A DNA stretch of 64,000 bases from Macrostomum lignano. Its lineage: Eukaryota. Shown here piece after piece: positions 1-64,000 of the stretch; the stretch's first letter is position 1; the number at the start of each line of letters is the position of its first letter. The position numbers and the translations under genes are program-made. The stretch is taken from assembly GCA_002269645.1 (NCBI GenBank), contig NIVC01001453.1, positions 47,565 through 111,564 of the forward strand, in the 5' to 3' direction. Under the pieces are notes generated by a model. It was not told where the DNA came from. It made no database searches and saw only the letters and a program-made list of their open reading frames with translations.

Positions 1-222
1 AAGCATGAGCTAAATATGCAACAACTGCAGGTGTGCATTGCACTGTACTGTGCTGTCAGAGCTTGAGACTTAAAGAGGTACGTACAGACTGAGCTGCAGT
101 TTGAATACTCCTGTTTTAAGACACAACAGTAGCCAGTTAATTGAAATAATATCTTCGTCTTTGGTGTTTAATTTTGAACAGCTTTTACGGACCGATTATA
201 TAATTTAGACTGCTTTTCTCAG

Positions 223-14645: not shown

Positions 14646-17600
14646 TCAAGCCTGACTGTTCGACTTAGTCGAAGAATCCTGCAGAGCGCTCACACTGCCT
14701 GGAACAGTTGAGCACACGGTCAGGTCCGGATGACTCTGACATCGACGCTTTCTTCCTTTGTAAGCTGTTCGCCAAATTTCCACGAAACAGCAGGCCGAAT
14801 GGAACCGGAAGAAGATGATCAGCGGCGAGCACACGTAGGCAAAGATGTTCGACGCGACTGGTACGTAGGCGTGACTGTAGTTTGGCAGATTGTTGATCTC
14901 GCGTATCTCCAACGTGTACACAATCCACTGGGCGATGTTGCCCAGCAGTAAGGCGGCGATCATTTCTCGGCCGGGCTTCTCCTCGATGACTTCGTCACTT
15001 TTAGAGCGACGCTTTTCACCGTCGAGAACCAGGTAGACCTACGAGCGTAGAAGGATTGCAGTGAGCGCATTATTAGTGAGATTTGCGATCGCGGTGCTAG
15101 CAGGAGCGTAGCCAGGATTTTTATTGATGGGGCATGTTGGGACAGCGTCAGCAACAGGAAATTTTTGATATAGCGCCCCAAAAAAAGATACAGCGTCCCC
15201 AACCAAGATACAGCGTCCCCAACCAAGATACAGCGTCCCCAACCAAGATACAGCGTCCCCAACCAAGATACAGCGTCCCCAACCAAGATACAGCGTCCCC
15301 AACCAAGATACGGCGTCCCCAACCAAGATACAGCGTCCCCAACCAAGATACAGCGTCCCCAACCAAGATACAGCGTCCACAACCATGAGACAGCGTCTCT
15401 AACCAAGAGACTGCGTCCCAAACAAGAGACTGAGTACACTGCCGAACAAGAAATGCTCAATGAGAACAAGGCCGCTGTAACACCCTGTGTGAGTGTGTGC
15501 CAGCCCAGGGATTCACAAGTAAAAGGGCATCAACTGTCGCCAATTGAATTTCGGCAGTGCCTGAAGCCCTAATAAATATAAGTAGCATAGTGCTACTAAC
15601 TAACATATATAGTATTAATTTTTTATCTGACTCTCACCTGGAAAACGCTCTGCCCAATCGAGAGCAGGCCCTCGATGATTCGCAGTGCCATAAAAACGCC
15701 TTGCTCAGCGGACGCGCCAAACAATTGAAACATCTGATAGGCCAGCACTCCGATCAGGGTGATGCCGAGCAGCCAGGAGTCTGGTCCCGTACCAGCCCGG
15801 TGTAGCAGAGTCAACTTGCGCATTTTGGCATTCGCAATGGCGCACAGCACCAGATTAACTGTCAGCAGGATCAGGTCTGTGATCTGATAGATTAATTGAC
15901 TTGTAACGGCGTCGTCTGGCTTGTCGTTGACGTACACGGTGAAGTAGATCCCCGACACGATGCCCAAAATGAGCAGAAAAGCGCCAAGAAAAAAACCTTT
16001 GTCAGTTTTGTAGCAGCTGGCGGAGAAGCTGGTCTGCGATCGTTTGCGATTTCTCAGACACTTCTTGGCCACGTTGAAGCCTTTGGATTGAATGACGTCC
16101 AGAAATTTGCTAACGTTTCGATACAGAGTGAAACAGGTGAACGCCGCCATCAGCGCGTACTCGATAGTGAATGGAAACAGGTAGGGCGCCATCCTCCAGA
16201 AGACGTCTTTTGAGCAAGTGCTTCCGACACTGTGTGCAGTTGTGCTGGCATTCGAGTATGTATCATTGCTGCTGTAACTGCTACTGCCGTGGTCTCCGTC
16301 GCCGTGGTCGTTGCCGCCAGAGTGATTCTTTGTACTATGACTCGTTTCCAGCAGGATCGCTTGGAACCAAACGCACATGTTGGTAGCTAACAGGTGCATG
16401 AAGCCCAGCACAGAGAACTGTGTGTGGCAGAGTTTGAAATTCGTTTTTTTCTAGCAAATTTATACGAATCACAGACGAAAGATTGTCGAAATGAACTCAA
16501 ATAATCTACTTATGAATAACCGCACAAAAGGCTATCACGAAGTTTTTATTAATAAGCCTTCTACAGATGTTCTACAGTTACTACATACTCATTTTATACT
16601 ACTAATTTGGTTGTTAACGGGTCGCCATCATAATATCACAAATATCACAAACCCGAAATATCAATTCCGAAAACCTAAATAGCGTTGGACATTGCTAGAA
16701 CTTTCGGAGTTGTGATATTTCGGGTTTGTCATATTTCGGGTTTATGATATTTTGGTGGAAAGCACTTTTTGGAGCTGTGATTTTTCGGGGTTGTGATGCC
16801 CCCGACCCCCTGTTATACCATATATTTATTCTCTTGAATCTGCACTAAGCAAACTTACATTTCTGTAGATGTTCACGGAAACTTTGCTGTATTTGAAGAG
16901 AAAGAAGGTCTGCAGCACGGTGAAGATAATGCTTAGCGTGTACTGAAGCACCTTGGCAACGGAATCGCTGACCTTCTTGTAGGCGCAGTGGCCAGTGATG
17001 TCCGCCATGCAGTCTACAATCATCAGCGTCTCGTGTGTCATCTTCAAGGCGCCGAAGATGAAGCAGGCAACCCGGAGGAAGAACGAGGGCGAGTGCGACT
17101 CCTGCAGTGACAGCACTGAACAAGCTGGGATCTCTTGGACGCCAAATTCCCGGGCGTTCTGCAGCAGCGTCGAGTTGATCCGGTCGCCCATACGACGCCC
17201 ACTGCCGCCGCCGTGGCCAGCGCCGCCGGCAGCGCCGTTTCGCCGACGGCGAGCGGCGGCGGCTGCCGTAGCGACCGAGAATGCGGTTGTCGCGTCCGAA
17301 TACGCCGAATTCACCGTTGTCTGCTGGTCAAAGACAGTGCTGCTGCGGTTGGACGAGCCGTTGCTGATGGAGTCGATTCTAGGAAATAGGATTTTTCGAT
17401 AGACTGGTTGATAGGGGCTTTAATCTCGATCAAATATACCGGAAAATGTACCTAATCTACATTCCTACACGCTTTGGAAATAGCTTTGAAGATAAAAGAA
17501 CAGAAAGCTATCAATATAGAGTTAAGACATAAAACTTCGTTGACAAATTACCGAGTTTGAAATCATGCTATTCTGGGATGTCAAGCGTACAGATTCTTAT

Positions 17601-20600
17601 CATTAGAGAAAGATGGGAGCATCTATCATCAGGGAACCATGAGGACGTAGCGCTCGTCAAAATGTACTTTACAAGTATCATTGGAAAACTTAAAAACTCT
17701 AAGCGAAATCTAATTGCACACATGCACATTGTGCAATTAAAAAGAACCTTATTTGTGCTCGAAAAAGGACCTGATTTGTGCTCGAAAAAGGACCTGATAT
17801 GTGCTTGAAAAAGGACCTGATTTTTGCTTGAAAAAGGACCTGATTTGTGCTTGTAAAAAGACCTGATTTTTGCTTGAAAAAGAACCTGATTTGTGCTCGA
17901 AAAAGGACCTGATTTGTGCTTGAAAAGGACCTTTGTTTCACCTGTCAGGCAGTTCCGGACTCTCGCTGACTCCTGGTTCGTGCAGTTCGATGCAGGCCTC
18001 GCCGAAAGCTGGGGCTGGGGGCAGATTTGGTGCTGCAGCCGACTCCTTTGTGGTCTAGAAACGGGGGAATATTTTAATTAGGAGTGATGAAGCGATGACT
18101 TATTACAGTTAATAATATTAAACCCGGATTCGAATAAACTCCGGAGTAAAAGTGCTTAATGAAATTCATTACCTCCTTGTTAGCTTCAAACGCTTTGTTG
18201 TCATTTCCGCTGTCCTGAAAATGAAATTAGATTTTAAATTTTGAATTCAGAATCTGGGCACTAGCTACTTAGGAGACGTGGCTCATATTAAGACACCTAA
18301 AATTTTATATACGTCGTATGAAGCACACTAGGGCTATGAATTGCTAGCGTAGACTACGTGCGTAAGTAACCACAGGGCTACGACTACATGAGTTCCCAGC
18401 ACAAACTAAGTAACCACAGGGCTACGACTCCATGAGTTCCCAGCACAAACTAAGTAACCACAGGGCTACGACTCCATGAGTTACCAGCACAAACTAAGTA
18501 ACCACAGGGCTACGACTCCATGAGTTACCAGCACAAACTAAGTAACCACAGGGCTACGACTCCATGAGTTCCCAGCACAAACTAAGTAACCACAGGGCTA
18601 CGACTCCATGAGTTCCCAGCACAAACTAAGTAACCACAGGGCTACGACTCCATGAGTTCCCAGCACAAACTAAGTAACCACAGGGCTACGACTCCATGAG
18701 TTACCAGCACAAACTAAGTAACCACAGGGCTACGACTCCATGAGTTCCCAGCACAAACTAAGTAACCACAGGGCTACGACTCCATGAGTTCCCAGCACAA
18801 ACTAAGTAACCACAGGGCTACGACTCCATGAGTTCCCAGCACAAACTAAGTAACCACAGGGCTACGACTCCATGAGTTCCCAGCACAAACTAAGTAACCA
18901 CAGGGCTACGACTCCATGAGTTCCCAGCACAAACTAAGTAACCACAGGGCTACGACTCCATGAGTTCCCAGCACAAACTAAGTAACCACAGGGCTACGAC
19001 TCCATGAGTTCCCAGCACAAACTAAGTAACCACAGGGCTACGACTCCATGAGTTCCCAGCACAAACTAAGTAACCACAGGGCTACGACTCCATGAGTTCC
19101 CAGCACAAACTAAGTAACCACAGGGCTACGACTCCATGAGTTCCCAGCACAAACTAAGTAACCACAGGGCTACGACTCCATGAGTTCCCAGCACAAACTA
19201 AGTAACCACAGGGCTACGACTCCATGAGTTCCCAGCACAAACTAAGTAACCACAGGGCTACGACTCCATGAGTTCCCAGCACAAACTAAGTAACCACAGG
19301 GCTACGACTCCATGAGTTCCCAGCACAAACTAAGTAACCACAGGGCTACGACTCCATGAGTTCCCAGCACAAACTAAGTAACCACAGGGCTACGACTCCA
19401 TGAGTTCCCAGCACAAACTAAGTAACCACAGGGCTACGACTCCATGAGTTCCCAGCACAAACTAAGTAACCACAGGGCTACGACTCCATGAGTTCCCAGC
19501 ACAAACTAAGTAACCACAGGGCTACGACTCCATGAGTTCCCAGCACAAACTAAGTAACCACAGGGCTACGACTCCATGAGTTCCCAGCACAAACTAAGTA
19601 ACCACAGGGCTACGACTCCATGAGTTCCCAGCACAAACTAAGTAACCACAGGGCTACGACTCCATGAGTTCCCAGCACAAACTAAGTAACCACAGGGCTA
19701 CGACTCCATGAGTTCCCAGCACAAACTAAGTAACCACAGGGCTACGACTCCATGAGTTACCAGCACAAACTAAGTAACCACAGGGCTACGACTCCATGAG
19801 TTCCCAGCACAAACTAAGTAACCACAGGGCTACGACTCCATGAGTTCCCAGCACAAACTAAGTAACCACAGGGCTACGACTCCATGAGTTACCAGCACAA
19901 ACTAAGTAACCACAGGGCTACGACTCCATGAGTTCCCAGCACAAACTAAGTAACCACAGAACTACGACTTCGAGTTCTAATACCAATCTACGAACAGATC
20001 AGATCACAGACCTCTTCGTCGGAGTCCATAGACCCATTCATCCCGACGTGAAAAGTCACCGGACCCGGTCGATGATGATTGTGATGCAGCTGATTCTGAT
20101 CAAGCTCTTGCTGGTAGCGCCGTCTCTCCGAGTCCGATAGGAACAAAATATGCGGCGGTCGTCTCAATACCCAGGCAAGAAAGAAGACGAGAAAGGCGAT
20201 GGAAACCAGGTACAAGATGATGTAGAAGCCTGCCAGGTACCAAGCTGAGAAGGGCTCCAAGCTGACATAGTTTGATAGCGGAAAGACAAAGCCAAACAGG
20301 GTGAGGCCCATGGCGTACAGCAGGGCCAGCTGATCAAAGGTTGCCGACCGATGCTCGGAGCTGCGACCTGCCGCGCTCTCCGCTCGATCGTGAGCGTGCC
20401 GATCGCGCAGCTGAGTAAACGGATTTTCTATAGAGTTGATGCGGACCACCTTGGAAGACTTCGGCTTGTTGGCAGTCGTTGGCGAGACAGCGGAAGCCGC
20501 TACAGCCTCTGACGCCGGGGCCTTGATACTGGCGTTGGATCTGACCGACCTGCGGAACGTCTCTGGCACAGTGGCGACAGACAGATGGTTGGCCGCATTG

Positions 20601-20614
20601 GGTCGCTGCTGCAT
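14646..20614 (-). CDS. Otop: Otopetrin family proton-selective channel (~816 aa, 6 coding exons)
   Basis: Exons 20614-20012, 18214-18173, 18054-17942, 17378-16859, 16417-15638 and 15038-14646. All introns are GT-AG with consistent phases. Family motifs: LLYAMGLTLFGFVFP, FYIILYLVSIAFL, SHSPSFFLRV, GFMHLLATNMCVW, YLFPFTIEYALMAA, KPGREMIAALLLGN, PLIIFFRFHS. The start codon is uncertain, since an upstream exon spliced at cacag near 20636 is possible. Confidence 0.92.
15178..15410. repeat. 20-bp minisatellite (CCCCAACCAAGATACAGCGT)n
   Basis: In the last otopetrin intron, about 11 copies. Confidence 0.92.
16619..16808. mobile_element. Palindromic MITE-like insertion (~190 bp) in an otopetrin intron
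   Basis: Perfect 17-bp inverted repeat: ACAAACCCGAAATATCA (16647-16663) and TGATATTTCGGGTTTGT (16713-16729). Ends are GGGTCG...CGACCC. No clear TSD. Confidence 0.5.
17750..17930. repeat. ~22-23-bp minisatellite (AAAAAGGACCTGATTTGTGCTTG)n
   Basis: Otopetrin intron. Confidence 0.85.
18365..19960. repeat. 44-bp near-perfect minisatellite (AGTAACCACAGGGCTACGACTCCATGAGTTCCCAGCACAAACTA)n, ~36 copies
   Basis: Otopetrin intron 1; the main variation is a single C/A site. Confidence 0.95.
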
Positions 20615-21239
20615 TGCCAAGTTGAATGGGAGCTTATTGCTGTGAGCTCTGGCAGACTCGCAAAAAAATTGTCAACGAGTTGTTCTGCCTTCTTTTTTAT
20701 CGCTGATGCTCTCTCAATGCTGTTGAAAAAAGTAATGAAAATAAATAGTTGTGAGCGCACTGGGCAGTCAGTTTTGGCGTCACGAATGCACTACAATGGT
20801 ATGCGGTTTAATGTGATCTTATTTGCTGCTCAGCCTATTTCTGCGAGTATCTCTCTGTCTCCTTATTTCCTTCTCTCTTCTGTCTTTCTGTTTGTCTCGT
20901 CAGGGGTAGAGGAGACTTATTTTTTTAACTTGAGCGAAATACAATGCACAGTACGACGCTATAATGTTATGTGAGTCTTCTTACTCTCCTGTGCTGAATT
21001 TGTTGTACACAGCGACTTCTCAAAAACAGTCAGGAGCCATGCATAGGCTGTTGCGCTCAATATTTTTAGAGACTTAACTCCGTCCGTCTGTTTGCCAGCT
21101 TTATGTGTAGTTTTGCAGCGTTATTGTTTTTTGTCTTAAAAGTACATGTACAATGCAGCCACGGCCCTTACTTTAGTTTGTAGGCATAAGAATTTGCCTT
21201 CTCGAGACATATTTTGTGCATAATGGCTAATAAAGCATA

Positions 21240-31735: not shown

Positions 31736-34700
31736 TCACTTAGCCAATCCCGCTTGCAGAGCCATCTCGTAGAACACGGATGTTTTGTTAGCCAACAGTT
31801 CGCTAGGCGAGCCGGACTCGAGCACGCGACCTTGCTCTAGTACAACAATCTTATCGTAGTCCATCACCGTATTCAGCCGATGAGCCACAGTGATCAAGGT
31901 GGCGTCAGAGAATTTCTCCCTGATCGTGCGCTGAATCAGAGCGTCGGTGCCAACGTCAACGGCAGCGGTGGCTTCGTCCAGTACGAGCAGGCGGCTGCGG
32001 CGAAGCAGAGCTCGCGCTAGACAGACCAGCTGGCGCTGGCCAAGCGACAGGTTCGCTCCGCCCTCCGAGATGGGGTGGCTCAGCCCGGTCTCCAAGCCGG
32101 AGGCCCAGCTCTTCAGGTGAGCCGTCTCCAACGCCGACCAGACCTCGTCGTCAGTGTGCCGATCGAACGGGTCGAGATTCCAGCGCAGACTGCCGGCGAA
32201 CAGCAGGGGGTCCTGCGGTATCAGGGTGATCCTAGTCCGCAGCGTGTGCAGGCCGAGTTTGGTCACGTCAACGCCGTCCAGCAGCAGCTGGCCGGACCGG
32301 GGCTCCAGCACGCGGAACAGCGACAGAGTCAGGGTGCTCTTGCCTGACCCGGTGCGACCCACGATGCCAACCCGCTGGCCGGGGCTGACCTCCAGGTTGA
32401 TGTCGGCCAGGGCCGGCGGCAGGTCGTCTCGGTAGCGACAGGCGAAGCCGCGAAAGCTGACGCCGCCCAGGGGCCAGCCGTCTGGTAGGGGCGGCTCGTC
32501 TGGCCGTTGCCAGGGGGCCTCCTGCTCCAGCTCGGAGTACTCCTTGATTCTGCAGTGCGGGCGGATTGTGTGTTGCACTATGGGGACAACATAGATGGCT
32601 TCTAGCATGCATTTATGAGTGAGGGAATCTAAAGATAGGGATTTCAAGCATGGCGATCTAAAGATTGGGATTCTAGGCATGAAGATATAAAGATGGGGAT
32701 TCTAAGCATAGAATCTAAAGATGGGGATTCTAAGCAGGGGATCCAAAGATGAGGATAATAAGCATGGGGATCTAAAGCTGGGGATTATAATCATGGGGAT
32801 ATAAAGATGGGGATTCCAAGCATGGGGATCTAAAGATGGGGATTATAATCATGGGGATATAAAGATGGGGATTCCAAGCATGGGGATCTAAAGATGGGGA
32901 TATTAAACATGGGGATCTAAAGATAAGGGTTATAAGCATGGGTATTCTAAGCAAGGGATCTAAAGATGGGGATTATAATCATGGGGATATAAAGATGGGG
33001 ATTCCAAGCATGGGGATCTAAAGATGGGGATATTAAACATGGGGATCTAAAGATAAGGGTTATAAGCATGGGTATTCTAAGCAAGGGATCTAAAGATGGG
33101 GATTCTAAGCAGGGGATCCAAAGATGGGGATAATAAGCATGGGGATCTAAAGCTGGGGATTATAATCATGGGGATATAAAGATGGGGATTATAAACATGG
33201 GGATCTAAAGCTGGGGATTATAAACATGGGGATCTAAAGATAAGGGTTATAAGCATGACGATTCTAAGCAAGGGATCGAAAGATAGGTATTCTAAGCATG
33301 GGATCTAAAGTTGGGGATTATAATCATGGGGATTCTAAGCATAGATCTAAAGATGTGGATTCTAAGCATGAAATCTTAAGATGGGGATTATAAGCTTGGG
33401 AATTCTAAGCATGAGGATCCTAAGCACATAGGGATTAAGGGAGCTTAAGATCCCTGAAATGGGATAAGATAAAAATGAATTCTCACCTCTCCACGGCAAC
33501 AATATTAGTCTCCAACTCCGAAGTCATTCGGATCAGCCAATTCAGGCTCTGGGTAACGTTGAGCGCATAGATAGCGGCCAGACCTACCAGACCAGGGGAC
33601 ACGGTGCCCCTGGCCAGCACGCCAAACAGACAGGTGAATGTGACAATCAGATTGCCAACCAGCTCCAACCGGACGGCCAGCCACCTATTCGAACTAATAT
33701 TCGGATAATAGCAGCGATTGAAAAAGTTAACGCGATCGTTGCAGATTCGTTTGAAATTCGATTGCTGTTCGAATGCCCGAATAGTGGTCACGCCAGACAG
33801 GGTCTCGGAGAAGTGGGAGAAAATCGGCGACTTGGCCGTTGATTCCAGCCGCTTCAGCTGCCGGGATGAGCTGATGAAGATTCTCTGCGATTGGGGAGCG
33901 ACAGATGAAGCAGATGCTGTTTATCAATGCTGTGGTCTAACCAACTACATGCAAGCTTCAGTTAGTTGCTATGGGAACATGGCCTAGCAACAAAAGAGCA
34001 TCATCCGATCTATTATTAGTTAAAACACAAAGTGTAGGGAATTGAGACGGGGGAATTAACACAAGATAGCGGAGCTGAAAAATTGGTGAGCTGGTACAGA
34101 GTTCAGACTAAGGAATTCAGCAGGGAATTCAGAACACTGGGGAAGTGAGCCAGCGGGGAATTCAGAATTCTGGGGAAGTGAGCCAGCGGGGAATTCAGAA
34201 CACTGGGGAAGTGAGCCAGCGGGGAATTCAGAATTCTGGGGAAGTGAGCCAGCGGGGAATTCAGAACACTGGGGAAGTGAGCCAGCGGGGAATTCAGAAT
34301 TCTGGGGAAGTGAGTCAGCGGGGAATTCAGAATTCTGGGGAAGTGAGTCAGCGGGGAATTCAGAATTCTGGGGAAGTGAGCCAGCGGGGAATTCAGAATT
34401 CTGGGGAAGTGAGTCAGCGGGGAATTCAGAACACTGGGGAAGTGAGCCAGCGGGGAATTCAGAACACTGGGGAAGTGAGCCAGCGGGGAATTCAGAATTC
34501 TGGGGAAGTGAGTCAGCGGGGAATTCAGAACACTGGGGAAGTGAGCCAGCGGGGAATTCAGAACACTGGGGAAGTGAGTCAGCGGGGAATTCAGAATTCT
34601 GGGGAAGTGAGCCAGCGGGCAATTCAGAATTCTGGGGAAGTGAGCCAGCGGGGAATTAAGAACACTGGGGAAGTGAGTTCTAGCAGAAACAAAATATATA

Positions 34701-37700
34701 CTAGCACAAAAACTTGGTATAAAATCAAGGCTAGATTGATTGCAGATGCAGTGCGCAAAAAACAGTTGAAGTTGAAACGTACCAGAAAAGTAGCTGAAAA
34801 TGCAACAATTAGTGGTTAATCATCATAGTAAAATAAATAAAATTGTCCAGACAAGACAAGATAATTAAATCTACGGAGGACTAAAAACGCTGTGCGGGTA
34901 CACGGCCACCTGTACAAACAGCAGGGCAGCAATGCCCGCCAGCAGAGCCAGCAACAGGCTGACATCCAGCTGGCACAGCACCGCGGCCCGTTCCAGCAGT
35001 CCGCAGGCGGCCTGAATCAGATATCGGCAGGCCAACGCCATCTCGGCATCAACCGAGGCCAGATCGTCGGCAAAGCGCTGCAAGAATTCGCTGCCAACAG
35101 TTCGTCCGCCGCCTTTGCCATCGTCTGGAGATACAAGAGCGACAACAGGCGATTTTAGTAGGTTGGCCAGCAGGCCCCAGTAAAGGGCAACAGAGGCGCG
35201 GGTGCCGCCGACGGCTGTTAGAAACTGCGACATGAGAACGGCTATGGCTGGATAGTCGGATGGGAGCGGAAGAAAGGTAGGCCAGAGAAATACTTCAGAA
35301 AATAACGAAATGCGTACTAAAGTACATGCGTACTAAAGTACATGCGTACTAAAGTACATGCGTACTAAAGTACATGCGTACTAAAGTACATGCGTACTAA
35401 AGTACATGCGTACTAAAGTACATGCGTACTAAAGTACATGCGTACTAAAGTAAATGCGTACTAAAGTACATGCGTACTAAAGTACATGCGTACTAAAGTA
35501 CATGCGTACTAAAGTACATGCGTACTAAAGTACATGCGTACTAAAGTACATGCGTACTAAAGTACATGCGTACTAAAGTACATGCGTACTAAAGTACATG
35601 CGTACTAAAGTACATGCGTACTAAAGTAAATGCGTACTAAAGTACATGCGTACTAAAGTACATGCGTACTAAAGTACATGCGTACTAAAGTACATGCGTA
35701 CTAAAGTACATGCGTACTAAAGTACATAAAATAAGCTAACTGAAGAGTAAAGGTTACGCATTGGCAAAGTATATAACAATACGCTCGTAATATAAAATCT
35801 GTGTACCAAGCAAAACAAAAAGTGCATTACTATACACAAAATTAAAAACACAAAAAGCCACAACAATCAATAACGAAGGCAAGCAACATAAGAGGTTATA
35901 TTGTTTATATTGCAAGGTTAAGCAAAATTATTGATTTTTAATATGAATTAGCTGGTGAAAGCAACGGGGTGCGCGTGTACCCCGCATGCATTTGCGTTTT
36001 GTCTTCCATAATTACCAGTGCACAACAAGAGTTAAGAGACAAAAACACGACACCACGCAAAACCAACTAAAAGTATAAATAAAGACCTGAACGCCATGGA
36101 ACATTGCGGCAATGCCAATTAGAGCCACTAGAAACCATGGCAACGCGAAGGACACGGCAATAAGAGCCTCCAATAGCCAGAAGGCAATACGAAGCATGGT
36201 GCGCCACTTCTCGGCCAAATCGCGATCGACGCAATTCACGTCGCTGCTAAATCGATTCACGATGCGGCCCAGCGGGGTCGATTCGAAGAATGTTAGCATG
36301 CAGGCCAACACCCGGTTCAACAGGTTGTTGTGCAATAGGCGGGACGCTCTCAGACAGGCGATCGAAGAAATAAATGCGCCCCAGAAGATCGCTAGCGCTG
36401 CGTTTTGTTTGGGCGGGTGGTTTGCATTGGCGTGTATTGCGCTTTTGTAATCACTTCGAATTTACGAGCGTATTCGTTAATTTAGCAATTGCTTGGAATC
36501 GAATTTAGAATAGGCGAAAAACATTGCTAACCAAACAGCTGCGTGATGTTATTATTTTTCACAAATTAATTTCCATTTTTTTATTTTATAAAACTGAAGG
36601 ATAAAAGTGAAACCTAAAAACGGCTACAGATCCGACCTGAAGGATAGAGATGAAATCTGGAGTATAGAGGTCCAACCTGAAGGATAGAGATCAAACCTGA
36701 AGAACAGCTATATTTGTAGGTCTGAGATTACTCTGCACAATTTTTTTATTAGACGACTAGTTAACTCAAGTTGCATTCCAATAAAATTAATTTAAATTAA
36801 ACGCTTATTAACCAACCAACTATGAAAAAATGCGTTTTGCGTTTTAGTACTGGAAAAAATACCCCTTTTCAGCGCTTTAGCTAGAAAATCAGAATCAAAA
36901 TCAATTAGCACTGCTGTTGCGCAGCTTCAATATAGCAACTACAATCCATGGGATGCTGCTATGCAATTGTTATGCGCTCTACCCCAGCCACCTGTACAAG
37001 GCAGAAAGGTGCGCACAAGGCAAGACCGATCGGCAGCAGAGCCGGCGACAATCTCAACGCCGACACGGTCGTTAAACCGACAAAATTTTCCGCAACCCAG
37101 AAGCAGCTCTGTACAACCCATTTCCATCGACGCGGCATGGCAATGTCTAGGCGAGACACGTCGCCAGAGAATACGTTAATAGTCCTGCCGCAGGCGCGTA
37201 ATTCGTGCGCGTGAACAGGCTGGCGTAACAGCGAGCGCAACAGATCAGAGTGCAGTTGACGAGATGCGTGTGTGGCGCACAGCCAAATGCCAAGCATACC
37301 GACGGCTGCGTGACTGGCTGCAACAGCATATTTTTTTATGCTCCGATTATTCTACTTACAAGTAGGCTAGTTTAGGGTTTTTGAACCTCACAGGGACATC
37401 TATCAATACTCGTAACAGTTATTACCTACCTAAATATACAAACACACTAAAGTACATGGGTACGAAAGTACATACGTACTAAAGTACATACGTACTAAAG
37501 TACATACGTACTAAAGTACATACGTACTAAAGTACACGCGTAATTAAGTACATACGTACTAAAGTACATGCGTAATAAAATACATACGAATTGAAGCACA
37601 TACGTACCAAAGTACATACCAATTAAGGTGCATGTACTAAAGTACATGTACTATACGTTGGTTTAGAACTAAACAACAGATATACCAAAGTACACACGTA

Positions 37701-38715
37701 CCAAAGCATACCCGTAGCAAAGTACACGCGTTCTAAACCAAACATTTACATGCGAAATTTTACATTATCATCGAAAATTAGGGTAGCTAAAGCAGATGAG
37801 AAAATATTGCATCTTGCATTTTTTTAAATTACATACTTTTAAATAACTTATATACTCGTAAGTAGACAGAGTCAACAGACTTTTGCCTAGAAAATACACA
37901 CACAAAGTATTACAAACGACAAATGCATGTAGAGAACAAGACACCCCGTTAACTTTGTTGATTAGCGCAAAGTCATTATTAAAATTGCAATTGATTTTAG
38001 GTTATATAATATAATCTGGCTACTTGTTTGGCACTCTCTGATCACGCGTGCAGGACCTTGGCATAAATAAATACTCACTTGTATGAAATAATAGAACACA
38101 GCTACTGAAAGACAAACGGCTAGGGCTGGCAGGTAGAATAAAGTGGCAATGACAATGCCAATGCCAACCAACTGAATCAGGCTGTTGGCCAGAGATCTCA
38201 AAGTGAATGGCAGTACAAGATCTACTTCGTCTAGATCTGCACTGAATCTGGTTATGATTGGGCCGCTCAAAATGCTGGCAGAGAAACGCAAAGCTGGCCA
38301 GCTTAGCAACGAATTGAGCAGGTTTTGGTGCAGGTGCACCGATGCCAGGGTGGCGCTGAAGGCGCACTGTACGGCCCCAATGCATTCGGCAAAGCCTGTT
38401 CATGTATAGTGCATTGGTACGGTTATGGCATTGGCTGGGCACTGAGCTCTATGATACAAAAGCTGACATATTCTACACGGTAACAGTGTAGTAGTACCGA
38501 TGTAATGCTTTATTAAATAAATGAATCTACTTTTTATGATCATTAGAAACAAACGCTTGCTTAGAAAAACAATATATATGTATAGAGCAGTTAAAATCTC
38601 TTGAAACTTTGCTTATGTATCTGTGTCTATCAATTAATCACTCAATCAATCAACCTATCCAGCTACCTACCTAGCTACCAATCTACCCACCTCTATCTAT
38701 CTATCTTTATCTATG

Positions 38716-38748
<33 letters not shown>

Positions 38749-38791
38749 GTCTATCTATCTATCCATCTATCTATCTATCTATCTATCTATC

Positions 38792-38842
<51 letters not shown>

Positions 38843-38903
38843 GTCTATCTATCTGTCTATCTATCTATCTATCTGTCTATCTATCTATCTATCTATCTAT
38901 CTG

Positions 38904-38945
<42 letters not shown>

Positions 38946-38954
38946 CATCCATCC

Positions 38955-38998
<44 letters not shown>

Positions 38999-38999
38999 G

Positions 39000-39077
<78 letters not shown>

Positions 39078-39086
39078 CATCCATCC

Positions 39087-39118
<32 letters not shown>

Positions 39119-39135
39119 GTCTATCTATCTGTCTG

Positions 39136-39169
<34 letters not shown>

Positions 39170-42100
39170 CATCCATCTATCTACCTACCTATCTATCTAC
39201 GCCATCGGTCAGACTCAGCCCCATCCAGCCCCAGAGCTGGCTCACCTTGCAGCAAGCCAAACGCAGCCAGAATGCCAATCCGCTGCGGCCGGCTCCAGCT
39301 CTCAGCCAGAGGCGCAACTGTTGTGCCGTTGACTCCGCCGCCGCGACTGCTGCTTCCATTGAATTGCGCAATCCGCCTGGCGTCGTCAGTCCAGTCCACC
39401 AGCCAGAAGTTGGAGCCCAGGGACAGGCCGTGAGCGAGAATGTAGGTGATGACAACGCCCAGGCAGAAGAGCAGTCCGACAGCGCGGAAATAAGTCAGAT
39501 AGACACGCCAGTTCACCCGGCCAGTTTTGGATTTCTCCTCGTCTGTGGTTCTGAATAGCGCGTTCGCAGCGGGGGCGCCTTCGAGATTCTTCTTACTGGC
39601 GTCTGGAAATTCGGTTAGCAGGGTGTCAACTGGCCTTAGTATTGCTTGCTAAGACCTCAATTTTTCCATGGGTGCCACACACAGTCGCTGGCGCCCCCCC
39701 CCCGCGGTGCCACACCCAGTCTCTGGTGTGTTTCTCCCCGGTGCCACACCCAGTCTCTGGCGCCCCCCCCGGTGCCACACCCAGTCTCTGGTGTTTCTCC
39801 CCGGTGCCACACCCAGTCTCTGGTGTTTCTCCCCGGTGCCACACCCAGTCTCTGGTGTTTCTCCCCGGTGCCACACCCAGTCTCTGGCGCCCCCCCCCGG
39901 TGCCACACCCAGTCTCTGGCGCCCCCCCGGTGCCACACCCAGTCTCTGGTGTTTCTCCCCGGTGCCACACTCAGTCTCTGGCGCCCCCCCTGGTGCCACA
40001 CCCAGTCTCTGGTGTTTCTCCCCGGTGCCACACTCAGTCTCTGGCGCCCCCCCCTGGTGCCACACCCAGTCTCTGGTGTTTCTCCCCGGTGCCACACTCA
40101 GTCTCTGGCGCCCCCCCTGGTGCCACACCCAGTCTCTGGCGCCCCCCCGGGTGCCACACCCAGTCTCTGGCGCCCCCCCCCGGGTGCCACACCCAGTCTC
40201 TGGCGCCCCCCCCGGTGCCACACCCAGTCTCTGGTGTTTCTCCCCGGTGCCACACTCAGTCTCTGGCGCCCCCCCCCTGGTGCCACACCCAGTCTCTGGT
40301 GTTTCTCCCCGGTGCCACACTCAGTCTCTGGCGCCCCCCCTGGTGCCACACCCAGTCTCTGGCGCCCCCCCCGCGGTGCCACACCCAGTCTCTGGTGTGT
40401 TTCTCCCCGGTGCCACACTCAGTCTCTGGCGCCCCCCCCCCCTGGTGCCACACCCAGTCTCTGGTGTTTCTCCCCGGTGCCACACCCAGTCTCTGGCGCC
40501 CCCCCCGGTGCCACACCCAGTCTCTGGTGTTTCTCCCCGGTGCCACACCCAGTCTCTGGTGTTTCTCCCCGGTGCCACACCCAGTCTCTGGTGTTTCTCC
40601 CCGGTGCCACACCCAGTCTCTGGCGCCCCCCCCCGGTGCCACACCCAGTCTCTGGCGCCCCCCCCACCCGGTGCCACACCCAGTCTCTGGCGCCCCCCCC
40701 CACCCGGTGCAACACCCAGTCTCTGGTGTTTCTCCCCGGTGCCACACTCAGTCTCTGGCGCCCCCCCCGGTGCCACACCCAGTCTCTGGTGTTTCTCCCC
40801 GGTGCCACACTCAGTCTCTGGCGCCCCCCCTGGTGCCACACCCAGTCTCTGGCGCCCCCCCCGGGTGCCACACCCAGTCTCTGGCGCCCCCCCCGGGTGC
40901 CACACCCAGTCTCTGGCGCCCCCCCCCCGGTGCCACACCCAGTCTCTGGTGTTTCTCCCGGTGCCACACTCAGTCTCTGGCGCCCCCCCTGGTGCCACAC
41001 CCAGTCTCTGGCGCCCCCCCGGGTGCCACACCCAGTCTCGCCACACCCAGTCTCTGGCGCCCCCCCCGGGTGCCACACCCAGTCTCTGGCGCCCCCCCCC
41101 CGGTGCGACACCCAGTCTCTGGCGCCCCCCCCCGGTGCCACACCCAGTCTCTGGCGCCCCCCCGGTGCCACACCCAGTCTCTGGCGCCCCCCGGTGCCAC
41201 ACCCAGTCTCTGGCGCCCCCCGGTGCCACACCCAGTCTCTGGCGCCCCCCCGGTGTGGCCCACGCCCCGGTGCCACACCCAGTCTCTGGTGTTTCTCCCC
41301 GGTGCCACACCCAGTCTCTGGCGCCCCCCCCCGGTGCCACACTCAGTCTCTGGCGCCCCCCCCCCCTGGTGCCACACCCAGTCTCTGGCGCCCCCCCCCA
41401 GTGCCACACCCAGTCTCTGGCGCCCCCCCCGGTGTGGCCCCCGCCCCCGGTGCCACACCCAGTCTCTGGCGCCCCACCCTCGGTGTGCCCCCCCGGTGCC
41501 ACACCCAGTCTCTGGCGCCCCCCGGTGCCACACCCAGTCTCTGGCGCCCCCCCCGGTGTGGCCCACGCCCCCGGTGCCACACCCAGTCTCTGGTGTTTCT
41601 CCCCGGTGCCACACCCAGTCTCTGGCGCCCCCCCCCCCGGTGCCACACTCAGTCTCTGGCGCCCCCCCCTGGTGCCACACCCAGTCTCTGGCGCCCCCCC
41701 CCCGGTGTGGCCCCCGCCCCCGGTGCCACACCCAGTCTCTGGCGCCCCACCCCTCGGTGTGCCCCCCCGGTGCCACACCCTGTCTCTGGCGTCCCCCCCC
41801 CCGGTGCCACACCCAGTCTCTGGTGTTTCTCCCCGGTGCCACACCCAGTCTCTGGTGTGTTTCTCCCCGGTGCCATACCCAGTCTCTGGTGTGTTTCTCC
41901 CCGGTGCCACACCCAGTCTCTGGTGTGTTTCTCCCCGGTGCCATACCCAGTCTCTGGTGTGTTTTTCCCCGGTGCCACACTCAGTCTCTGGTGTGTTTCT
42001 CCCCGGTGCCACACCCAGTCTCTGGTGTGTTTCTCCCCGGTGCCACACCCAGTCGCTGCCATCCCTATCGGCACTACAAACCTGCAGTCTTGTCAGCAAT

Positions 42101-60012: not shown

Positions 60013-63000
60013 TCAAGCAGACGTCAACGGTTCAGCAGCTTCTTCTGCGGCCTCTTCTAGAGACGGCGGCGTCTTCTTGCGAGATGTTGCAGAATTACCG
60101 GCAGCAGCTTTGTTGCCATGACAACAGCAATCCCGAGCCCAACGATAAATAGCCGGATAAATGGACAAGATCAGCAGATTAGAGACTAGCACGAATATGC
60201 CAGAGTAAATGAAGGCTCGATCGTAGTTAGAATCCGAGTCGCGCATATGGCCTACAGTGTGTTTGTGTTGATATGATGCAGGTTTTGGTAGACAGTACAG
60301 GTTTTAACGTTTAAACTCTAATGGGCGATCTTGAAATAACGATAAAACTTAAGTAACTTAGGATATTTTTCAGATACCACATGTCAATCAAAAAATGACG
60401 ACCTCCATAAATATTGATACTTCAGCAGTGTCAACAAACTTTAAATGACATGTGGCAATCATTAAAAAGGTGTTTGCCACTGTTCCAACTCGCAGGATAC
60501 AAAAGCCAAGTCAAAAGTTTAGCTGCTAGAAGGTCAATGCTTTATCTAATCAATGTCGGACATAGGACTCTGTATTTACGTGTCTGCCTGGCTTCAACTC
60601 TCAGGAGTGGTCAAGGTTCAGAAACTGTAACCTAATAAAAACTCTACTATGCAACCAGGCATTCGATAAGAAACACAAATGCTGCATTGTTATTAATACA
60701 AAGATATCGCTACACCTAAAGGATCGCTCGTGTCCTGATCCACTGCCTTGGAATAATTTCTGATCCAACCTGAGATTCACTCCTGATCTACCCTGAGAAT
60801 CACCCCTGATCCGCCCCTGAGAATCACTCCTAATCCATCCTGAGAATCACTCCTGATCTGCCCCCTGAGAATCACTCCTGATTCACCCTGAGAATCACTC
60901 CTGATCCACCCTGAGAATCACTCCTGATCCACCCTGAGAATCACTCTTGATCTGCCCCCCCCCCCTGAGAATCACTTCTGATCCACCCTGAGAATCACTT
61001 CTGATCCACCCTGAGAATCACTTCTGATCCACCATGAGAATCACTCCTGATCCACCCTGAGAATCACTCCTAATCCACCCTGAGAATCACTCCTAATCCA
61101 TCCTGAGAATCACCCCTGATCTGCCCCCTGAGAATCACTCCTGATCCACCCTGAGAATCACTCTTGATCTGCCCCCCCCCTGAGAATCACTCCTGATCCA
61201 CCCTGAGAATCACTCCTAATCCATCCTGAGAATCACTTCTGATCCACCCTGAGAATCACTCCTGATCCACCCTGAGAATCACTCCTGATCCACCCTGAGA
61301 ATCACTCCTAATCCACCCTGAGAATCACTCCTAATCCATCCTGAGAATCACCCCTGATCTGCCCCCTGAGAATCACTCCTGATCCACCCTGAGAATCACT
61401 TCTGATCCACCCTGAGAATCACTCCTGATCCACCCTGAGAATCACTCCTGATCCACCCTGAGAATCACTCCTGATCCACCCTGAGAATCACTCCTAATCC
61501 ATCCTGAGAATCACTCCTGATCTGCCCCCTGAGAATCACTCCTGATTCACCCTGAGAATCACTCCTGATCCACCCTGAGAATCACTTCTGTTCCACCCTG
61601 AGAATCACTCCTGATCCACCCTGAGAATCACTTCTGATCCACCCTGAGAATCACTCTTGATCTGCCCCCTGAGAATCACTTCTGATCCACCCTGAGAATC
61701 ACTCCTGATCCACCCTGAGAATCACTCCTAATCCACCCTGAGAATCACTCCTAATCCATCCTGAGAATCACCCCTGATCTGCCCCCTGAGAATCACTCCT
61801 GATCCACCCTGAGAATCACTCTTGATCTGCCCCCCCCCCCCTGAGAATCACACCTGATCTGCCCCCTGAGAATCACTCCTGATCTGCCCCCTGAGAATCA
61901 CTCCTAATCCACCCTGAGAATCACTCCTAATCCACCCTGAGAATCACTCCTGATCGGCCCCTGACAATCACTCTTGATCCATCCTGAGAATCACTCCTGA
62001 TCCACCCTGACAATTACTCCTAATCCATCCTGAGAATCACTTCTAATCCATTCTGAGAATCACTCCTAATCCACCCTGAGAATCACCCCTAATCCACCCT
62101 GAGAATCACTCCTGATCGGCCCCTGACAATCACTCCTGATCCATCCTGAGAATCACTCCTGATCGGCCCCTGACAATCACTCCTGATCCATCCTGAGAAT
62201 CACTCCTGATCGGCCCCTGACAATCACTCCTGATCCATCCTGAGAATCACTTCTGATCGGCCCCTGACAATCACTCCTGATCCATCCTGAGAATCACCCC
62301 TGATCCGCCCCTGAGAATCACTCCTGATCCGCCTTTTAAGAATCACTCCTGATCTCCCTGAGAATCAGCCAAAATCGACATCTAGGAGAATCACCCTAAA
62401 AACCGCTCATTGGACAATGTGGATCGCGTTAGAGCACTCAAGAGAAACACAGTGCAGACAAATTACCCATAGCAGGCGGTCCAACTAAGTTAGCGAATCC
62501 TTGGAAGAACATCATCAAACCGTAACCAGTGGTTAGCCGATCAATGCCGAACAAATCGATGATCACAATGGAGCACAAGGCGTAGTTGGCGCTAACTAGG
62601 AAGCCGTATAATATACCGTAGACTAGCAGGCTGGCAAGACTGTGACACCAGGGCACAAGGAAATTGGCCACGCCGGTTAAGCTCATGCACAGCGCGTACA
62701 ACAGTACAGTGTTCACTCGTGGAAAATCGCCAATATAGCCAATAACAATCTGGCCAATGGTATTGGACACTCCAATTAAAGCGATAATTAAGCTAACTTC
62801 GCCATCGCTCAGGCCAATCTCCTTGGCGTGATCCGGCATGAACGTATAAGTGATGTCGTACCAAAAGTACAACAGGAAATTCGACGCCAAAAATGACAAG
62901 TAATTCCAGGAGGTAAATAGAAATTTTGTGTCCTTAAATGATTTCGAATCCAGTACGCTGCGTTTTAATTTGCTTAGCATGGACACCTTGACCTGGGCGG

Positions 63001-64000
63001 GGTCGGCTAACCTGATTGTGCCGATTGGATGGAGGCAGCCGGCCAAACTCCGGACAGGAGTCCCACAATTCAATTTGCATAGCCGTGCTGAACGAGCGCG
63101 AGTGTGCTGCATAAAGTAGCGCCTATCAACTGGGAACAGCTGACGCCTAACCGTCTGAGAAGCTGTGTTCAATCTCGGCCTGGAAGCCTGATGCAGCTGT
63201 TGCTGATTAGACGGCTGCTGAGGAAGCTGAGGCAGGTGGAGTACAAAGAAAATTGCCTACTCTCGTCTTCCTCTTCGCACTGTTGCTGTTGCTGCTGCCT
63301 CTGTTGCTCTTGCTGATGCTTAAACTTCATACCGTCTTTTCTGCTGTTCGCCTTAAACATTTGCTGATTGCCTAACGCTGTGTTTTCGTCAGTTTTAGCG
63401 ACTGCGGCGGCTGCTGCGGCAACGGGATGCTTGTCGTTAGAGTGGACGGTGGCCGCGGAGTTGTCGGTGAAACCAGCAGCGAGACGCTGCAAGTAGCCCA
63501 GTTTAAGACTGGCTATAAGATGTTTCTCATCTGGCACCGGCGGTGCATTGGTTGAGACGGCGAAACGCTTAGAATCCGGTTGAACCCGACAAGCGGCTGG
63601 TGATTTGGACAGCTCAGCGCTCAAGTAAAGTCGGTATGGACAGCAGAGACTTGGCCGGAGCCACTGGTGACGCTCCGACAAAACCGCCTACGGGCCAACA
63701 GCGCGCCAGCGTCGAGAGGTCGGCGACCCGCTCTGCGACGAATCTGGCGACGATGTTGAAGGCGCTAACGAAGAAGATGGCGAATTGCTAGCATTGCCAA
63801 GTTTACCCTCGCGCCTCTACCGATGGCTCCGCCGCCATTTATAGCACTATTATGATTGGCCTCGTTAGCCTGCTGGAACTGCACGTACAATCGCTTCATT
63901 CGTTTCATCTCTTTGAAGTTTTCCGGCTGCAACGGTCGATAGAGTGCGCCGCAGACGCCACAAGTTTAACAATATTTCCGCCAATAATTAGAAAACTACC
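60013..64000 (-). CDS. SLC16/MCT monocarboxylate transporter (MFS), 5'-truncated by the window; apparent frameshifts in TM6 and the central loop
   Basis: Last exon 60251-60013 (ctgtag|GC, G-HMRDSDSNYDRAFIYSG). Intron donor ATG G|gtaatt at 62466. TM7-11 lie in ORF 62438-63172 (YFWYDITYTFMPDHA, IGVSNTIGQIVIGYIGD, YGILYG, GPPAMG). The TM6 motif GSFLIIGG/ILLNL/CVCGALYRPL at 64000-63930 is split over three frames. Confidence 0.85.
60770..62360. repeat. 23-bp minisatellite (CCCTGAGAATCACTCCTGATCCA)n
   Basis: Last MCT intron. Confidence 0.95.

What the first reader, a model, noticed from the sequence alone, without database searches (positions are those of the whole stretch)
34872..36010. Long-range intronic RNA duplex (~28 bp) that would loop out alternative exon D: a candidate selector/docking pair
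On the pre-mRNA (- strand), the element 77-113 nt after the exon C donor (36010 to 35974: UAUGGAAGAC-AAAACGC-aaaugca-UGCGGGGUACACG) is complementary to the element starting at +6 of the exon D donor (34904 to 34872: CGUGUACCCGCA-ca-GCGUUUU-ua-GUCCUCCGUA). There are three colinear stems: 12 bp with one bulge, 7 bp, and 9 of 10 bp including one G-U. Pairing would enclose exon D and sit right against its 5' splice site. This is the geometry of the docking-site/selector pairings known from Dscam-type mutually exclusive splicing. The pairing was found by eye and its function is inferred.
Basis: partly seen in the sequence, partly recalled or inferred. Interest (0 to 1): 0.82.

Follow-up and report, generated by a model that had tools for sequence, protein, structure and literature searches.

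The report
Intron RNA pairing around alternative exon
In a flatworm (Macrostomum lignano) MRP1/ABCC1 transporter gene with four alternative copies of one exon, the reported ~30-bp intron-to-intron RNA pairing is real and non-random, looks like the exon-choice RNA structures already described for this gene family in other animals, but is only one arm of a larger three-way pairing network and is untested functionally.

Summary
On the minus strand, 36010..35974 (77-113 nt after the exon C donor) pairs with 34904..34872 (+6 of the exon D donor). There are 30 bp in five colinear helices, the longest 9 bp, at -34.2 kcal/mol. Extended, the pairing also covers the exon D 5' splice site (-46.9).

It beats composition-matched shuffles (z about -5; 0/120 at intron-pair level). 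It is the second strongest 45-nt duplex among the donor-proximal regions of all 15 introns of the gene. Over whole cluster introns it is only marginal (3/24 shuffles).

The gene is Macrostomum lignano MRP1/ABCC1 (Mlig000262g1), with four tandem homologous exons A-D. All annotated isoforms use C.

The exon C element is a hub. It pairs more strongly with an element in intron A (38014..37914; -58 kcal/mol, z -8) through overlapping bases, so the two pairings compete. No convincing selectors for exons A or B match the exon D site.

Covariation could not be tested, because only three near-identical paralogous copies were available. Docking/selector pairings in MRP1 exon clusters are already published for other phyla.

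Verdict: a plausible new member of a known kind, with a hub-like twist. Function is inferred only.

The parts
35974..36010 (-). C-el core: the reported upstream arm, +77..+113 of intron C (UAUGGAAGACAAAACGCAAAUGCAUGCGGGGUACACG)
   Evidence: Sequence read. Duplex with D-el is -34.2 kcal/mol and 30 bp. Shuffle z is about -5.
34872..34904 (-). D-el core: the reported downstream arm, +6..+38 of intron D (CGUGUACCCGCACAGCGUUUUUAGUCCUCCGUA)
   Evidence: It is locally unstructured (66-nt fold -8.2 kcal/mol, z +0.85).
34855..34911 (-). Extended D-el, including the exon D 5' splice site (G|GUGG pairs with CCAC... of C-el at 35971..35967)
   Evidence: RNAduplex gives -46.9 kcal/mol and 43 bp with 36022..35967. 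The alignment to the reverse complement of C-el runs through CAG|GUGGCC.
35869..36022 (-). Intron C hub region (+65..+218). It carries overlapping binding sites for D-el (36022..35967), A-el (36003..35904) and the intron B 5' region (35962..35869).
   Evidence: No other copy of this sequence occurs in the 64-kb window. Its local fold is not unusually stable (z -0.6).
37914..38014 (-). A-el: intron A +65..+165, an inverted-complement partner of the intron C hub. Its cores are CAUGCAUUUG/CAAAUGCAUG (10 bp) and AACGGGGUG/CACCCCGUU (9 bp).
   Evidence: blastn inverted match, 86 columns at 70%, E 0.004. Smith-Waterman score 30 against a null of 12.3 +/- 2.1. RNAduplex -57.7 to -59 kcal/mol, z about -8. 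It dominates C-el:D-el in a three-element fold.
36874..36973 (-). Intron B +19..+118: a weak, long candidate partner of the 3' part of the intron C hub
   Evidence: Inverted Smith-Waterman score 21, p 0.007 uncorrected. RNAduplex -41.9 kcal/mol, z -4.0. It is not significant at the 45-nt scale.
36087..36397 (-). Variable exon C (311 nt; acceptor AG 36399-36398, donor GT 36086-36085). This is the exon used in all annotated isoforms.
34910..35247 (-). Variable exon D (338 nt; acceptor AG 35249-35248, donor CAG|GUGGCC at 34909). It is the exon enclosed by the reported pairing.
   Evidence: Open frame, matching phase and homology to exons A-C. The only difference between paralogous copies is synonymous. 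No annotated isoform uses it alone.
38079..38395 (-). Variable exon A (317 nt; donor CAA|GUGAGU)
   Evidence: Five of five differences between paralogous copies are synonymous.
36992..37317 (-). Variable exon B (326 nt; donor CAG|GUGGCU, the same 12-mer TGTACAGGTGGC as at the exon D donor)
39246..39603 (-). Upstream constant exon (ends ...GLLQ, phase 1)
   Evidence: tblastn of P0241
33486..33884 (-). Downstream constant exon (starts [15 protein letters not shown]; acceptor AG 33886-33885)

Best explanation
The window carries the Macrostomum lignano MRP1/ABCC1 gene (minus strand). It contains a cluster of four tandemly duplicated, mutually exclusive-type exons A-D that encode part of the second membrane domain.

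A ~150-nt region early in intron C acts as a hub for competing long-range RNA pairings.

- State 1, the reported pairing. The 5' part of the hub (36022..35967) pairs with the first ~45 nt of intron D (34911..34866). This buries the weak exon D 5' splice site and loops exon D out. It also brings the exon C donor closer to the downstream constant exon. The result would favour exon C, the isoform seen in every annotation.
- State 2. Overlapping bases of the hub pair with an element in intron A (38014..37914). This loops out exons B and C and frees the exon D donor.

The two states cannot coexist, because both need 35999..35974.

Shown: the exon cluster, the complementarities, their statistics, the overlap, and the accessibility of the intron D arm. 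Inferred: that the duplexes form in vivo and change exon choice.
For: Gene and cluster:
- 93% match to PAA59379.1 (BOX15_Mlig000262g4). The window is 100% identical to locus L082 (g1) over all non-repeat stretches of the cluster.
- Pfam ABC_membrane and ABC_tran domains, two of each.
- Four homologous exons, each with length of 2 mod 3 and ending in Q before GT.
- All 8 differences in the variable exons between paralogous copies are synonymous: 5 in A and 1 each in B, C and D. The alternative exons are therefore under coding constraint.

Pairing C-el:D-el:
- -34.2 to -46.9 kcal/mol.
- z about -5; 0/120 and z -5.8 at intron-pair level.
- Rank 2 of 17,745 gene-wide, with rank 1 being the A-el:C-el pair in the same cluster.
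- The extension covers the exon D 5' splice site.
- D-el has no competing local structure of note.

Pairing A-el:C-el:
- E 0.004, z about -8, 0/1000.
- Both elements lie at nearly the same offset from their donors.
- One copy (L081) carries C>U at 37925, turning a G-C pair into G-U while its partner is unchanged.

Other support:
- The exons are only 23-33% identical in protein, yet these intron segments keep about 70% complementarity.
- Precedent: competing intronic pairings are reported for MRP1 clusters in Drosophila, Hymenoptera and Branchiostoma, with docking sites downstream of the cluster (PMC6071210; PMC8791459).
- The human ATE1 case has a central element competing between two partners (abstract of PMC7797038).
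Against: - There is no cross-species or covariation evidence. The three available copies differ by 0.1-1.2% and show no change in C-el or D-el.
- The global MFE of 36090..34850 pairs C-el locally and pairs D-el into exon D instead.
- In an equilibrium three-element fold, A-el:C-el wins almost completely: 63 expected pairs against 3. The reported pairing may therefore form only when A-el is absent or occupied.
- Significance fades when the search space is all the cluster introns (3/24), and at the DNA-alignment level.
- The docking arm also matches the interior of exon B about as well (z -4.2). This shows that such matches can arise without an obvious role.
- Use of exons A, B and D in transcripts is not documented in the annotations seen.
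- State 2 alone does not explain how exon D is skipped when exon A is chosen.
Confidence: 0.45

Rival explanations
1. The complementarity is real at the sequence level but has no function. It would be either a chance match between two GC-rich islands in AT-rich introns, or a decaying trace of an old DNA-level inverted duplication or repeat insertion in the cluster.
For: - The longest perfect helix is only 9 bp, with four interruptions.
- blastn does not report the pair.
- The DNA-level score of 17 is ordinary among intron pairs of this gene.
- 3 of 24 whole-intron shuffles match its energy.
- The docking arm finds an equally good partner inside exon B.
- The pairing is absent from the MFE.
- The introns are full of tandem arrays, so the locus is prone to rearrangement.
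Against: - Composition-matched shuffles rarely reach it (0-1/1000; 0/120).
- It ranks 2nd of 17,745 gene-wide, and ranks 1 and 2 both fall in the exon cluster and share one element.
- It sits exactly on a 5' splice site.
- No other copy of the hub sequence exists in 64 kb, which argues against a dispersed repeat.
- The neighbouring exons have diverged to 23-33% protein identity, so neutral intron similarity of that age should be gone.
Confidence: 0.3
2. The functional structure is the longer intron A to intron C duplex (38014..37914 with 36003..35904), which loops out exons B and C. The shorter match of the same intron C element to the exon D donor region is incidental.
For: - A-el:C-el is stronger by every measure: -58 against -34 to -47 kcal/mol, z -8 against -5, and E 0.004 against not detected.
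- It takes essentially all of the pairing in a three-element fold.
- It carries the only pair-compatible substitution seen.
Against: - The D-el match is independently significant.
- It is positioned on the exon D donor.
- It uses hub bases upstream of the A-el site as well (36022..36004).
- Three-way competition of this kind has precedent in ATE1.
Confidence: 0.15
3. This is a classical one-dock, many-selector system. D-el is the docking site downstream of the last variable exon, and selectors in introns A, B and C each loop out all downstream variable exons, as proposed for 14-3-3zeta and MRP1 in insects.
For: - The docking position matches the published pattern.
- C-el is a strong selector.
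- Intron B has a colinear three-stem candidate at a similar offset, CUAAAGCGCUG..GGGGUA..CCA at 36880..36850 (-22.6 kcal/mol).
- Introns A, B and C all carry a GGGGU motif at +102..+137.
Against: - The intron B candidate is within noise (z -2.7 after choosing the best window; IB:ID 6/120).
- Intron A has no match to D-el (z +0.25; IA:ID 92/120).
Confidence: 0.1

Closest known systems
Docking site/selector competing RNA pairings in MRP1 (ABCC1) mutually exclusive exon clusters (Yue et al. 2017, RNA Biol 14:1399; cited in PMC6071210, PMC8791459 and PMC7434440)
   Same: - Same gene family.
- Tandemly duplicated exons, reported to have arisen independently in several phyla including Platyhelminthes-grade helminths.
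- Intron-to-intron pairing with an element in the intron downstream of the last variable exon.
- The pairing loops out the enclosed exon(s).
   Different: - The primary paper is not held in the library, so I could not check whether M. lignano was analysed.
- Only one convincing partner exists for the downstream element here.
- The shared, competed-for element lies inside the cluster, in intron C.
14-3-3zeta / Mhc-type downstream docking site model (Yang et al. 2011, as summarised in PMC6071210)
   Same: - The pairing joins an element just after one variable exon to an element after the last variable exon.
- It would bring the outer exon close to the constant exon and repress the exon inside the loop.
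   Different: - There is no set of selectors competing for the downstream site.
- The downstream arm overlaps the 5' splice site itself, adding direct splice-site masking.
Human ATE1 exons 7a/7b: elements R1 and R4 compete for the central element R3 (PMC7797038)
   Same: A central intronic element lies between alternative exons and has alternative upstream and downstream partners. Each pairing loops out different exon(s).
   Different: - Different gene and phylum.
- Four exons here rather than two.
- The upstream pairing encloses two exons.
- Nothing has been tested experimentally here.
Dscam1 exon 6 docking site/selector system (Graveley 2005; described in PMC6071210)
   Same: Mutually exclusive base pairing as the proposed basis for choosing one exon from a tandem array.
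   Different: In Dscam the docking site is upstream of the cluster, there is one selector per exon with a shared consensus, and conservation is strong. None of these is shown here.
Tandem-duplication origin of competing structures (Ivanov and Pervouchine 2018, PMC6071210)
   Same: - Exon duplicates carry flanking intron elements at equal offsets (A-el at +65..165, hub at +65..218).
- Introns A and C share one satellite family in the same orientation.
- The exon B and exon D donors share a 12-mer.
   Different: A-el and the hub are inverted complements rather than direct copies, and neither is a stable hairpin on its own. The simple duplicated-arm scenario therefore does not fit directly.

Membership tests
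Docking site/selector competing RNA structures of mutually exclusive exon clusters | Tandem array of homologous alternative exons with the same phase, so that co-inclusion breaks the reading frame | tested here: met
   Exons A-D are 317, 326, 311 and 338 nt, all 2 mod 3. All start in phase 1 and end in Q|GT. They align with one another at 23-33% identity. C+D co-inclusion would shift the frame (arithmetic on these lengths).
Docking site/selector competing RNA structures of mutually exclusive exon clusters | Only one exon of the array is included per transcript | not testable with these tools
   No transcript data are available. All annotated proteins contain exon C only. Synonymous-only differences between copies indicate that A (and possibly B and D) are coding.
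Docking site/selector competing RNA structures of mutually exclusive exon clusters | A single docking site in an intron flanking the cluster | tested here: inconclusive
   D-el lies in the intron after the last variable exon, the position reported for MRP1. However, the element with several partners is in intron C.
Docking site/selector competing RNA structures of mutually exclusive exon clusters | One selector per variable exon, each complementary to the docking site | tested here: not met
   Only C-el pairs significantly with D-el (z -4.5 to -5.8). The intron B candidate has z -2.7 and intron A has z +0.25. Intron-pair shuffles give IB:ID 6/120 and IA:ID 92/120.
Docking site/selector competing RNA structures of mutually exclusive exon clusters | The pairings are mutually exclusive because they share bases | tested here: met
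   A-el and D-el both use hub bases 35999..35974. In a three-element fold only one pairing forms.
Docking site/selector competing RNA structures of mutually exclusive exon clusters | Conservation with compensatory substitutions across species | not testable with these tools
   Only three M. lignano copies could be fetched, 98-100% identical in the elements. They show one G-C to G-U change in A-el. No close relative was found in the protein, metagenome or contig look-ups.
Docking site/selector competing RNA structures of mutually exclusive exon clusters | Disruptive and compensatory mutations change exon choice | not testable with these tools
   This is an experiment.
Hub-type competing structures (ATE1 R1/R3/R4-like) | A central intronic element between alternative exons, with alternative upstream and downstream partners that enclose different exons | tested here: met
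   The hub at 36022..35869 pairs upstream with 38014..37914 (enclosing B and C) or downstream with 34911..34866 (enclosing D). Both pairings are significant against shuffles.
ABCC1/MRP1 transporter gene | TMD0, two ABC_membrane domains and two ABC_tran domains, with closest named relatives being MRP1 | tested here: met
   Precomputed Pfam hits on P0121 and P0241. Identity to MRP1 of many animals is 44-49% at 87-100% coverage for most listed hits.

The most novel reading that the evidence does not exclude
A flatworm MRP1 exon cluster is controlled by a mid-cluster hub element. The hub toggles between a downstream partner that masks the 5' splice site of the last variable exon and an upstream partner that loops out two exons. 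This would be a three-way (possibly four-way, with intron B) RNA switch that arose independently of the insect and chordate MRP1 systems. It would be the first structure-based exon-choice mechanism shown in Platyhelminthes.
Probability: 0.25. Interest if true: 0.55.

Novelty: new member of a known kind. Interest (0 to 1): 0.4.

Why it matters
Competing intronic RNA pairings are the leading explanation for how one exon is chosen from a tandem array. MRP1 is the textbook case of such arrays arising independently in many phyla.

A flatworm example would add an independent lineage in which exon duplication and RNA-structure control arose together. Its shared element lies inside the cluster and one arm sits on a splice site, so it would also show a variant architecture closer to human ATE1 than to Dscam.

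M. lignano is transgenic-tractable, so the prediction is testable. If the pairing is not functional, the case is a useful caution: energies near -40 kcal/mol and z near -5 can arise between GC-rich islands in repeat-rich introns.

Tried and rejected
- Raw RNAduplex energy as a criterion. GC-rich exon windows give -40 to -47 kcal/mol, and 220x220-nt duplexes simply chain weak stems. I replaced this with composition-matched shuffles and 45-nt windows.
- blastn-short self-comparison. It misses the pair because the helices are short.
- The repeat finder, inverted mode. The output was swamped by tandem arrays, but it gave the first hint of the intron A partner.
- Palindrome hypothesis, that A-el and the hub only look inverted because each is a hairpin. 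Rejected: neither folds better than shuffles, and direct similarity is weaker than inverted similarity.
- Dispersed-repeat or MITE origin. No other copy was found in the 64-kb window. A genome-wide check was not possible.
- Known RNA family. Rfam gave only sub-threshold hits on the tandem arrays.
- Finding relatives. A 246-aa query found nothing above 64% identity, and the listed targets were all 430 aa or shorter. Exact look-ups of window ORFs found nothing. The metagenome scan gave at most 56% over the full length. A 1369-aa concatenated query then identified M. lignano.
- P0122, an older ab initio model that merges exons C and D, has no locus on record.
- The primary MRP1 paper (Yue et al. 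2017) is not held.
- Depletion of substitutions in the elements among the three copies. My tally of the differences listed gives about 3 observed against about 5 expected, so there is no power.
Full report
WHAT IS THERE

The finding lies in a gene on the minus strand. A rough 1369-aa concatenation of its exons matches Macrostomum lignano PAA59379.1 (BOX15_Mlig000262g4, "ABC-type glutathione-S-conjugate transporter") at 93%. It matches MRP1/ABCC1 of many animals at 44-49%, mostly at full coverage. Three paralogous M. lignano loci were fetched: L081 (g4), L082 (g1) and L083 (g2). L082 is 100% identical to the window over every non-repeat stretch of the region, so the window is this locus.

tblastn of the annotated protein gives the exon map. 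Between the constant exons 39603..39246 and 33884..33486 lie four homologous exons:
- A: 38395..38079
- B: 37317..36992
- C: 36397..36087
- D: 35247..34910

All four start in phase 1, end with a Gln codon before GT, and have lengths of 2 mod 3. They are 23-33% identical to one another in protein. They encode the FFE.TP.GR..NRFS region of the second membrane domain.

Every annotated isoform uses exon C. Only an old ab initio model (P0122) runs from C into D. All eight differences between the paralogous copies inside the variable exons are synonymous: five in A and one each in B, C and D. This argues that the unannotated exons are still coding.

THE OBSERVATION

RNAduplex on exactly those segments gives -34.2 kcal/mol and 30 bp.

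Extending both arms adds CACC/GGUG across the exon D 5' splice site (positions -1 to +3) and some AU pairs. That gives -40.7 to -46.9 kcal/mol. An alignment of the reverse complement of the intron C element with the exon D donor region runs straight through CAG|GUGGCC.

IS IT MORE THAN CHANCE?

Tests in its favour:
- Shuffling either or both arms with dinucleotides preserved gives z -4.9 to -5.7 and 0-1 of 1000 as good.
- I took the first 225 nt of introns C and D, took the best of all 45-nt window pairs, and shuffled within 45-nt blocks to keep local composition. The observed value is -41.1 against -23.7 +/- 3.0, and 0 of 120 shuffles reach it.
- Among the first 225 nt of all 15 introns of the gene (17,745 window pairs), this duplex ranks second. 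Rank 1 is another pair in the same cluster that uses the same intron C element. Rank 3 is a (UGUC)n/(GACA)n microsatellite pair.

Tests against it:
- Over all non-repeat intron sequence of the cluster, 3 of 24 block shuffles reach -40.7.
- As a Watson-Crick-only alignment it scores 17 (p about 0.017), which is ordinary among intron pairs here.
- GC-rich exon windows give lower raw energies.
- The same intron D arm matches the interior of exon B with z -4.2.
- The MFE of the 1241-nt stretch 36090..34850 does not contain the pairing.

My reading is that the complementarity is real and unlikely to be pure chance, especially given its position. It is not overwhelming.

WHAT THE SURROUNDINGS ADD

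The intron C element is a hub.

Partner in intron A. Bases 36003..35904 form an inverted match with intron A at 38014..37914:
- blastn: 86 columns at 70%, E 0.004.
- Smith-Waterman: score 30 against a null of 12.3 +/- 2.1.
- RNAduplex: -57.7 to -59 kcal/mol, z about -8, 0/1000.

The two elements lie at almost the same distance from their exon donors (+65..165 and +65..218). Neither is a stable hairpin by itself.

Partner in intron B. A weaker, long match joins intron B +19..118 to hub bases 35962..35869 (-41.9 kcal/mol, z -4.0). It is not significant at the 45-nt scale.

Competition. The intron A and intron D partners both need hub bases 35999..35974, so they exclude each other. In a construct of the three elements joined by linkers, the intron A pairing takes almost all the pairs (63 expected against 3). 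With intron A left out, the reported pairing forms with 43 expected pairs.

Selectors for the exon D site. I looked for classical selectors for the exon D site in introns A and B. Intron B has a colinear three-stem candidate at 36880..36850 (-22.6 kcal/mol), but it is within noise. Intron A has nothing.

Other checks. No other copy of the hub occurs in the 64-kb window. No Rfam family explains any of these elements.

COMPARATIVE EVIDENCE

The three copies differ by 0.1-1.2% in the cluster. C-el and D-el are invariant. One copy has C>U at 37925 in the intron A element, which turns a G-C pair with the hub into G-U. This is compatible with pairing but carries little weight. By my tally of the differences listed, about 3 fall in the elements where about 5 would be expected, so there is no power.

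No closer relatives could be reached. The protein searches, exact look-ups and the metagenome scan found nothing nearer than other phyla.

MECHANISM (INFERRED)

- State 1. The hub pairs with the intron D element. The weak exon D donor (CAG|GUGGCC) is masked and exon D is looped out. The exon C donor is brought towards the constant acceptor. This favours the annotated exon C isoform.
- State 2. The hub pairs with the intron A element. Exons B and C are looped out and the exon D donor is released.

Transcription order matters. The intron A element is made first. Removal of the intron that carries it (when the upstream constant exon splices to exon C) would free the hub for the intron D element.

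What remains unexplained is how exon D is skipped when exon A or exon B is chosen.

COMPARISON WITH WHAT IS KNOWN

Competing intronic pairings in MRP1 exon clusters, with the docking site downstream of the cluster, are reported for Drosophila, Hymenoptera and Branchiostoma. MRP1 exon duplications are said to have arisen independently in several phyla including helminths. This rests on Yue et al. 2017 as cited in PMC6071210, PMC8791459 and PMC7434440. The primary paper is not held, so I cannot say whether M. lignano was examined. A search of the held library found no paper that combines Macrostomum with mutually exclusive exons of MRP1.

The hub arrangement most resembles human ATE1, where R1 and R4 compete for R3 (abstract).

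As a member of the docking/selector class, the case meets the criteria for the exon array, the position and the mutual exclusion. It fails the one-selector-per-exon criterion. The conservation and mutational criteria could not be tested.

VERDICT

This is most likely a new member of a known kind, with a hub-like variant architecture. Confidence that the pairing is functional is about 0.45, and interest is moderate.

Noticed in passing
window 37914-38014 (minus strand, intron A) with 35904-36003 (intron C): A ~100-nt inverted complementarity, stronger than the reported pairing (-58 kcal/mol, z -8, blastn E 0.004). It encloses exons B and C and competes for the same intron C bases.
   Followed up: yes
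window 36874-36973 (intron B) with 35869-35962 (intron C): A long, weak colinear complementarity (-41.9 kcal/mol, z -4.0; Smith-Waterman p 0.007 uncorrected). It may be a third partner of the intron C hub, or it may be noise.
   Followed up: partly
window 37175-37194 (exon B interior, minus strand) with 34871-34891: The 3' half of the intron D arm also pairs with coding sequence of exon B (CUGCGGCAGGACUAUUAACG; about 17 bp; z -4.2). Its role is unknown, and it serves as a caution about chance matches.
   Followed up: partly
window 35310-35727 and 37446-37647: The same 16-nt satellite family (GUACUUUAGUACGCAU / ..GUAU) lies in the same orientation in introns C and A. The array is self-complementary and folds into one long hairpin in the MFE, which would shorten the effective distance between the intron C element and exon D.
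   Followed up: partly
window 34118-34677; 38692-39199; 39671-42058; 32623-33426: Other intronic tandem arrays: a 33-mer x17 in intron D, (TCTA)n before exon A, a 72% GC 32-34-mer array of about 2.4 kb in the intron after the exon at 42709-42083, and a 29-mer array in the last intron. Gene length differs by several kb among the three paralogous copies (19.4, 21.3 and 23.8 kb).
   Followed up: no
L083 16710-17869 versus window 36814-36702: The g2 copy carries about 1 kb of extra sequence in intron B relative to the window.
   Followed up: no
window 36992-37003 and 34910-34921 with their donors: Exons B and D end in the identical 12-mer TGTACAG|GTGGC, and their intron starts are alignable. This hints that the cluster grew by duplication of a two-exon unit (A,B to C,D).
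   Followed up: partly
exons A-D; L081 and L083 versus window: All 8 substitutions between paralogous copies inside the variable exons are synonymous (5 in A; 1 each in B, C and D). This is evidence that the unannotated alternative exons are under coding constraint.
   Followed up: yes
protein P0122 (UniRef A0A1I8HTH2): An older ab initio gene model joins part of exon C to exon D and reads through the intron D arm (..[12 protein letters not shown]|RIFISS). It is probably a prediction artefact rather than an isoform.
   Followed up: partly
window 7929-10788 (+), 15623-20620 (-), 62438-63681 (-): Other apparent coding exons, judged by eye from ORF translations only:
- a Q-rich / coiled-coil protein on the plus strand;
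- a multi-pass membrane protein on the minus strand;
- an MFS/monocarboxylate-transporter-like protein on the minus strand.
   Followed up: no
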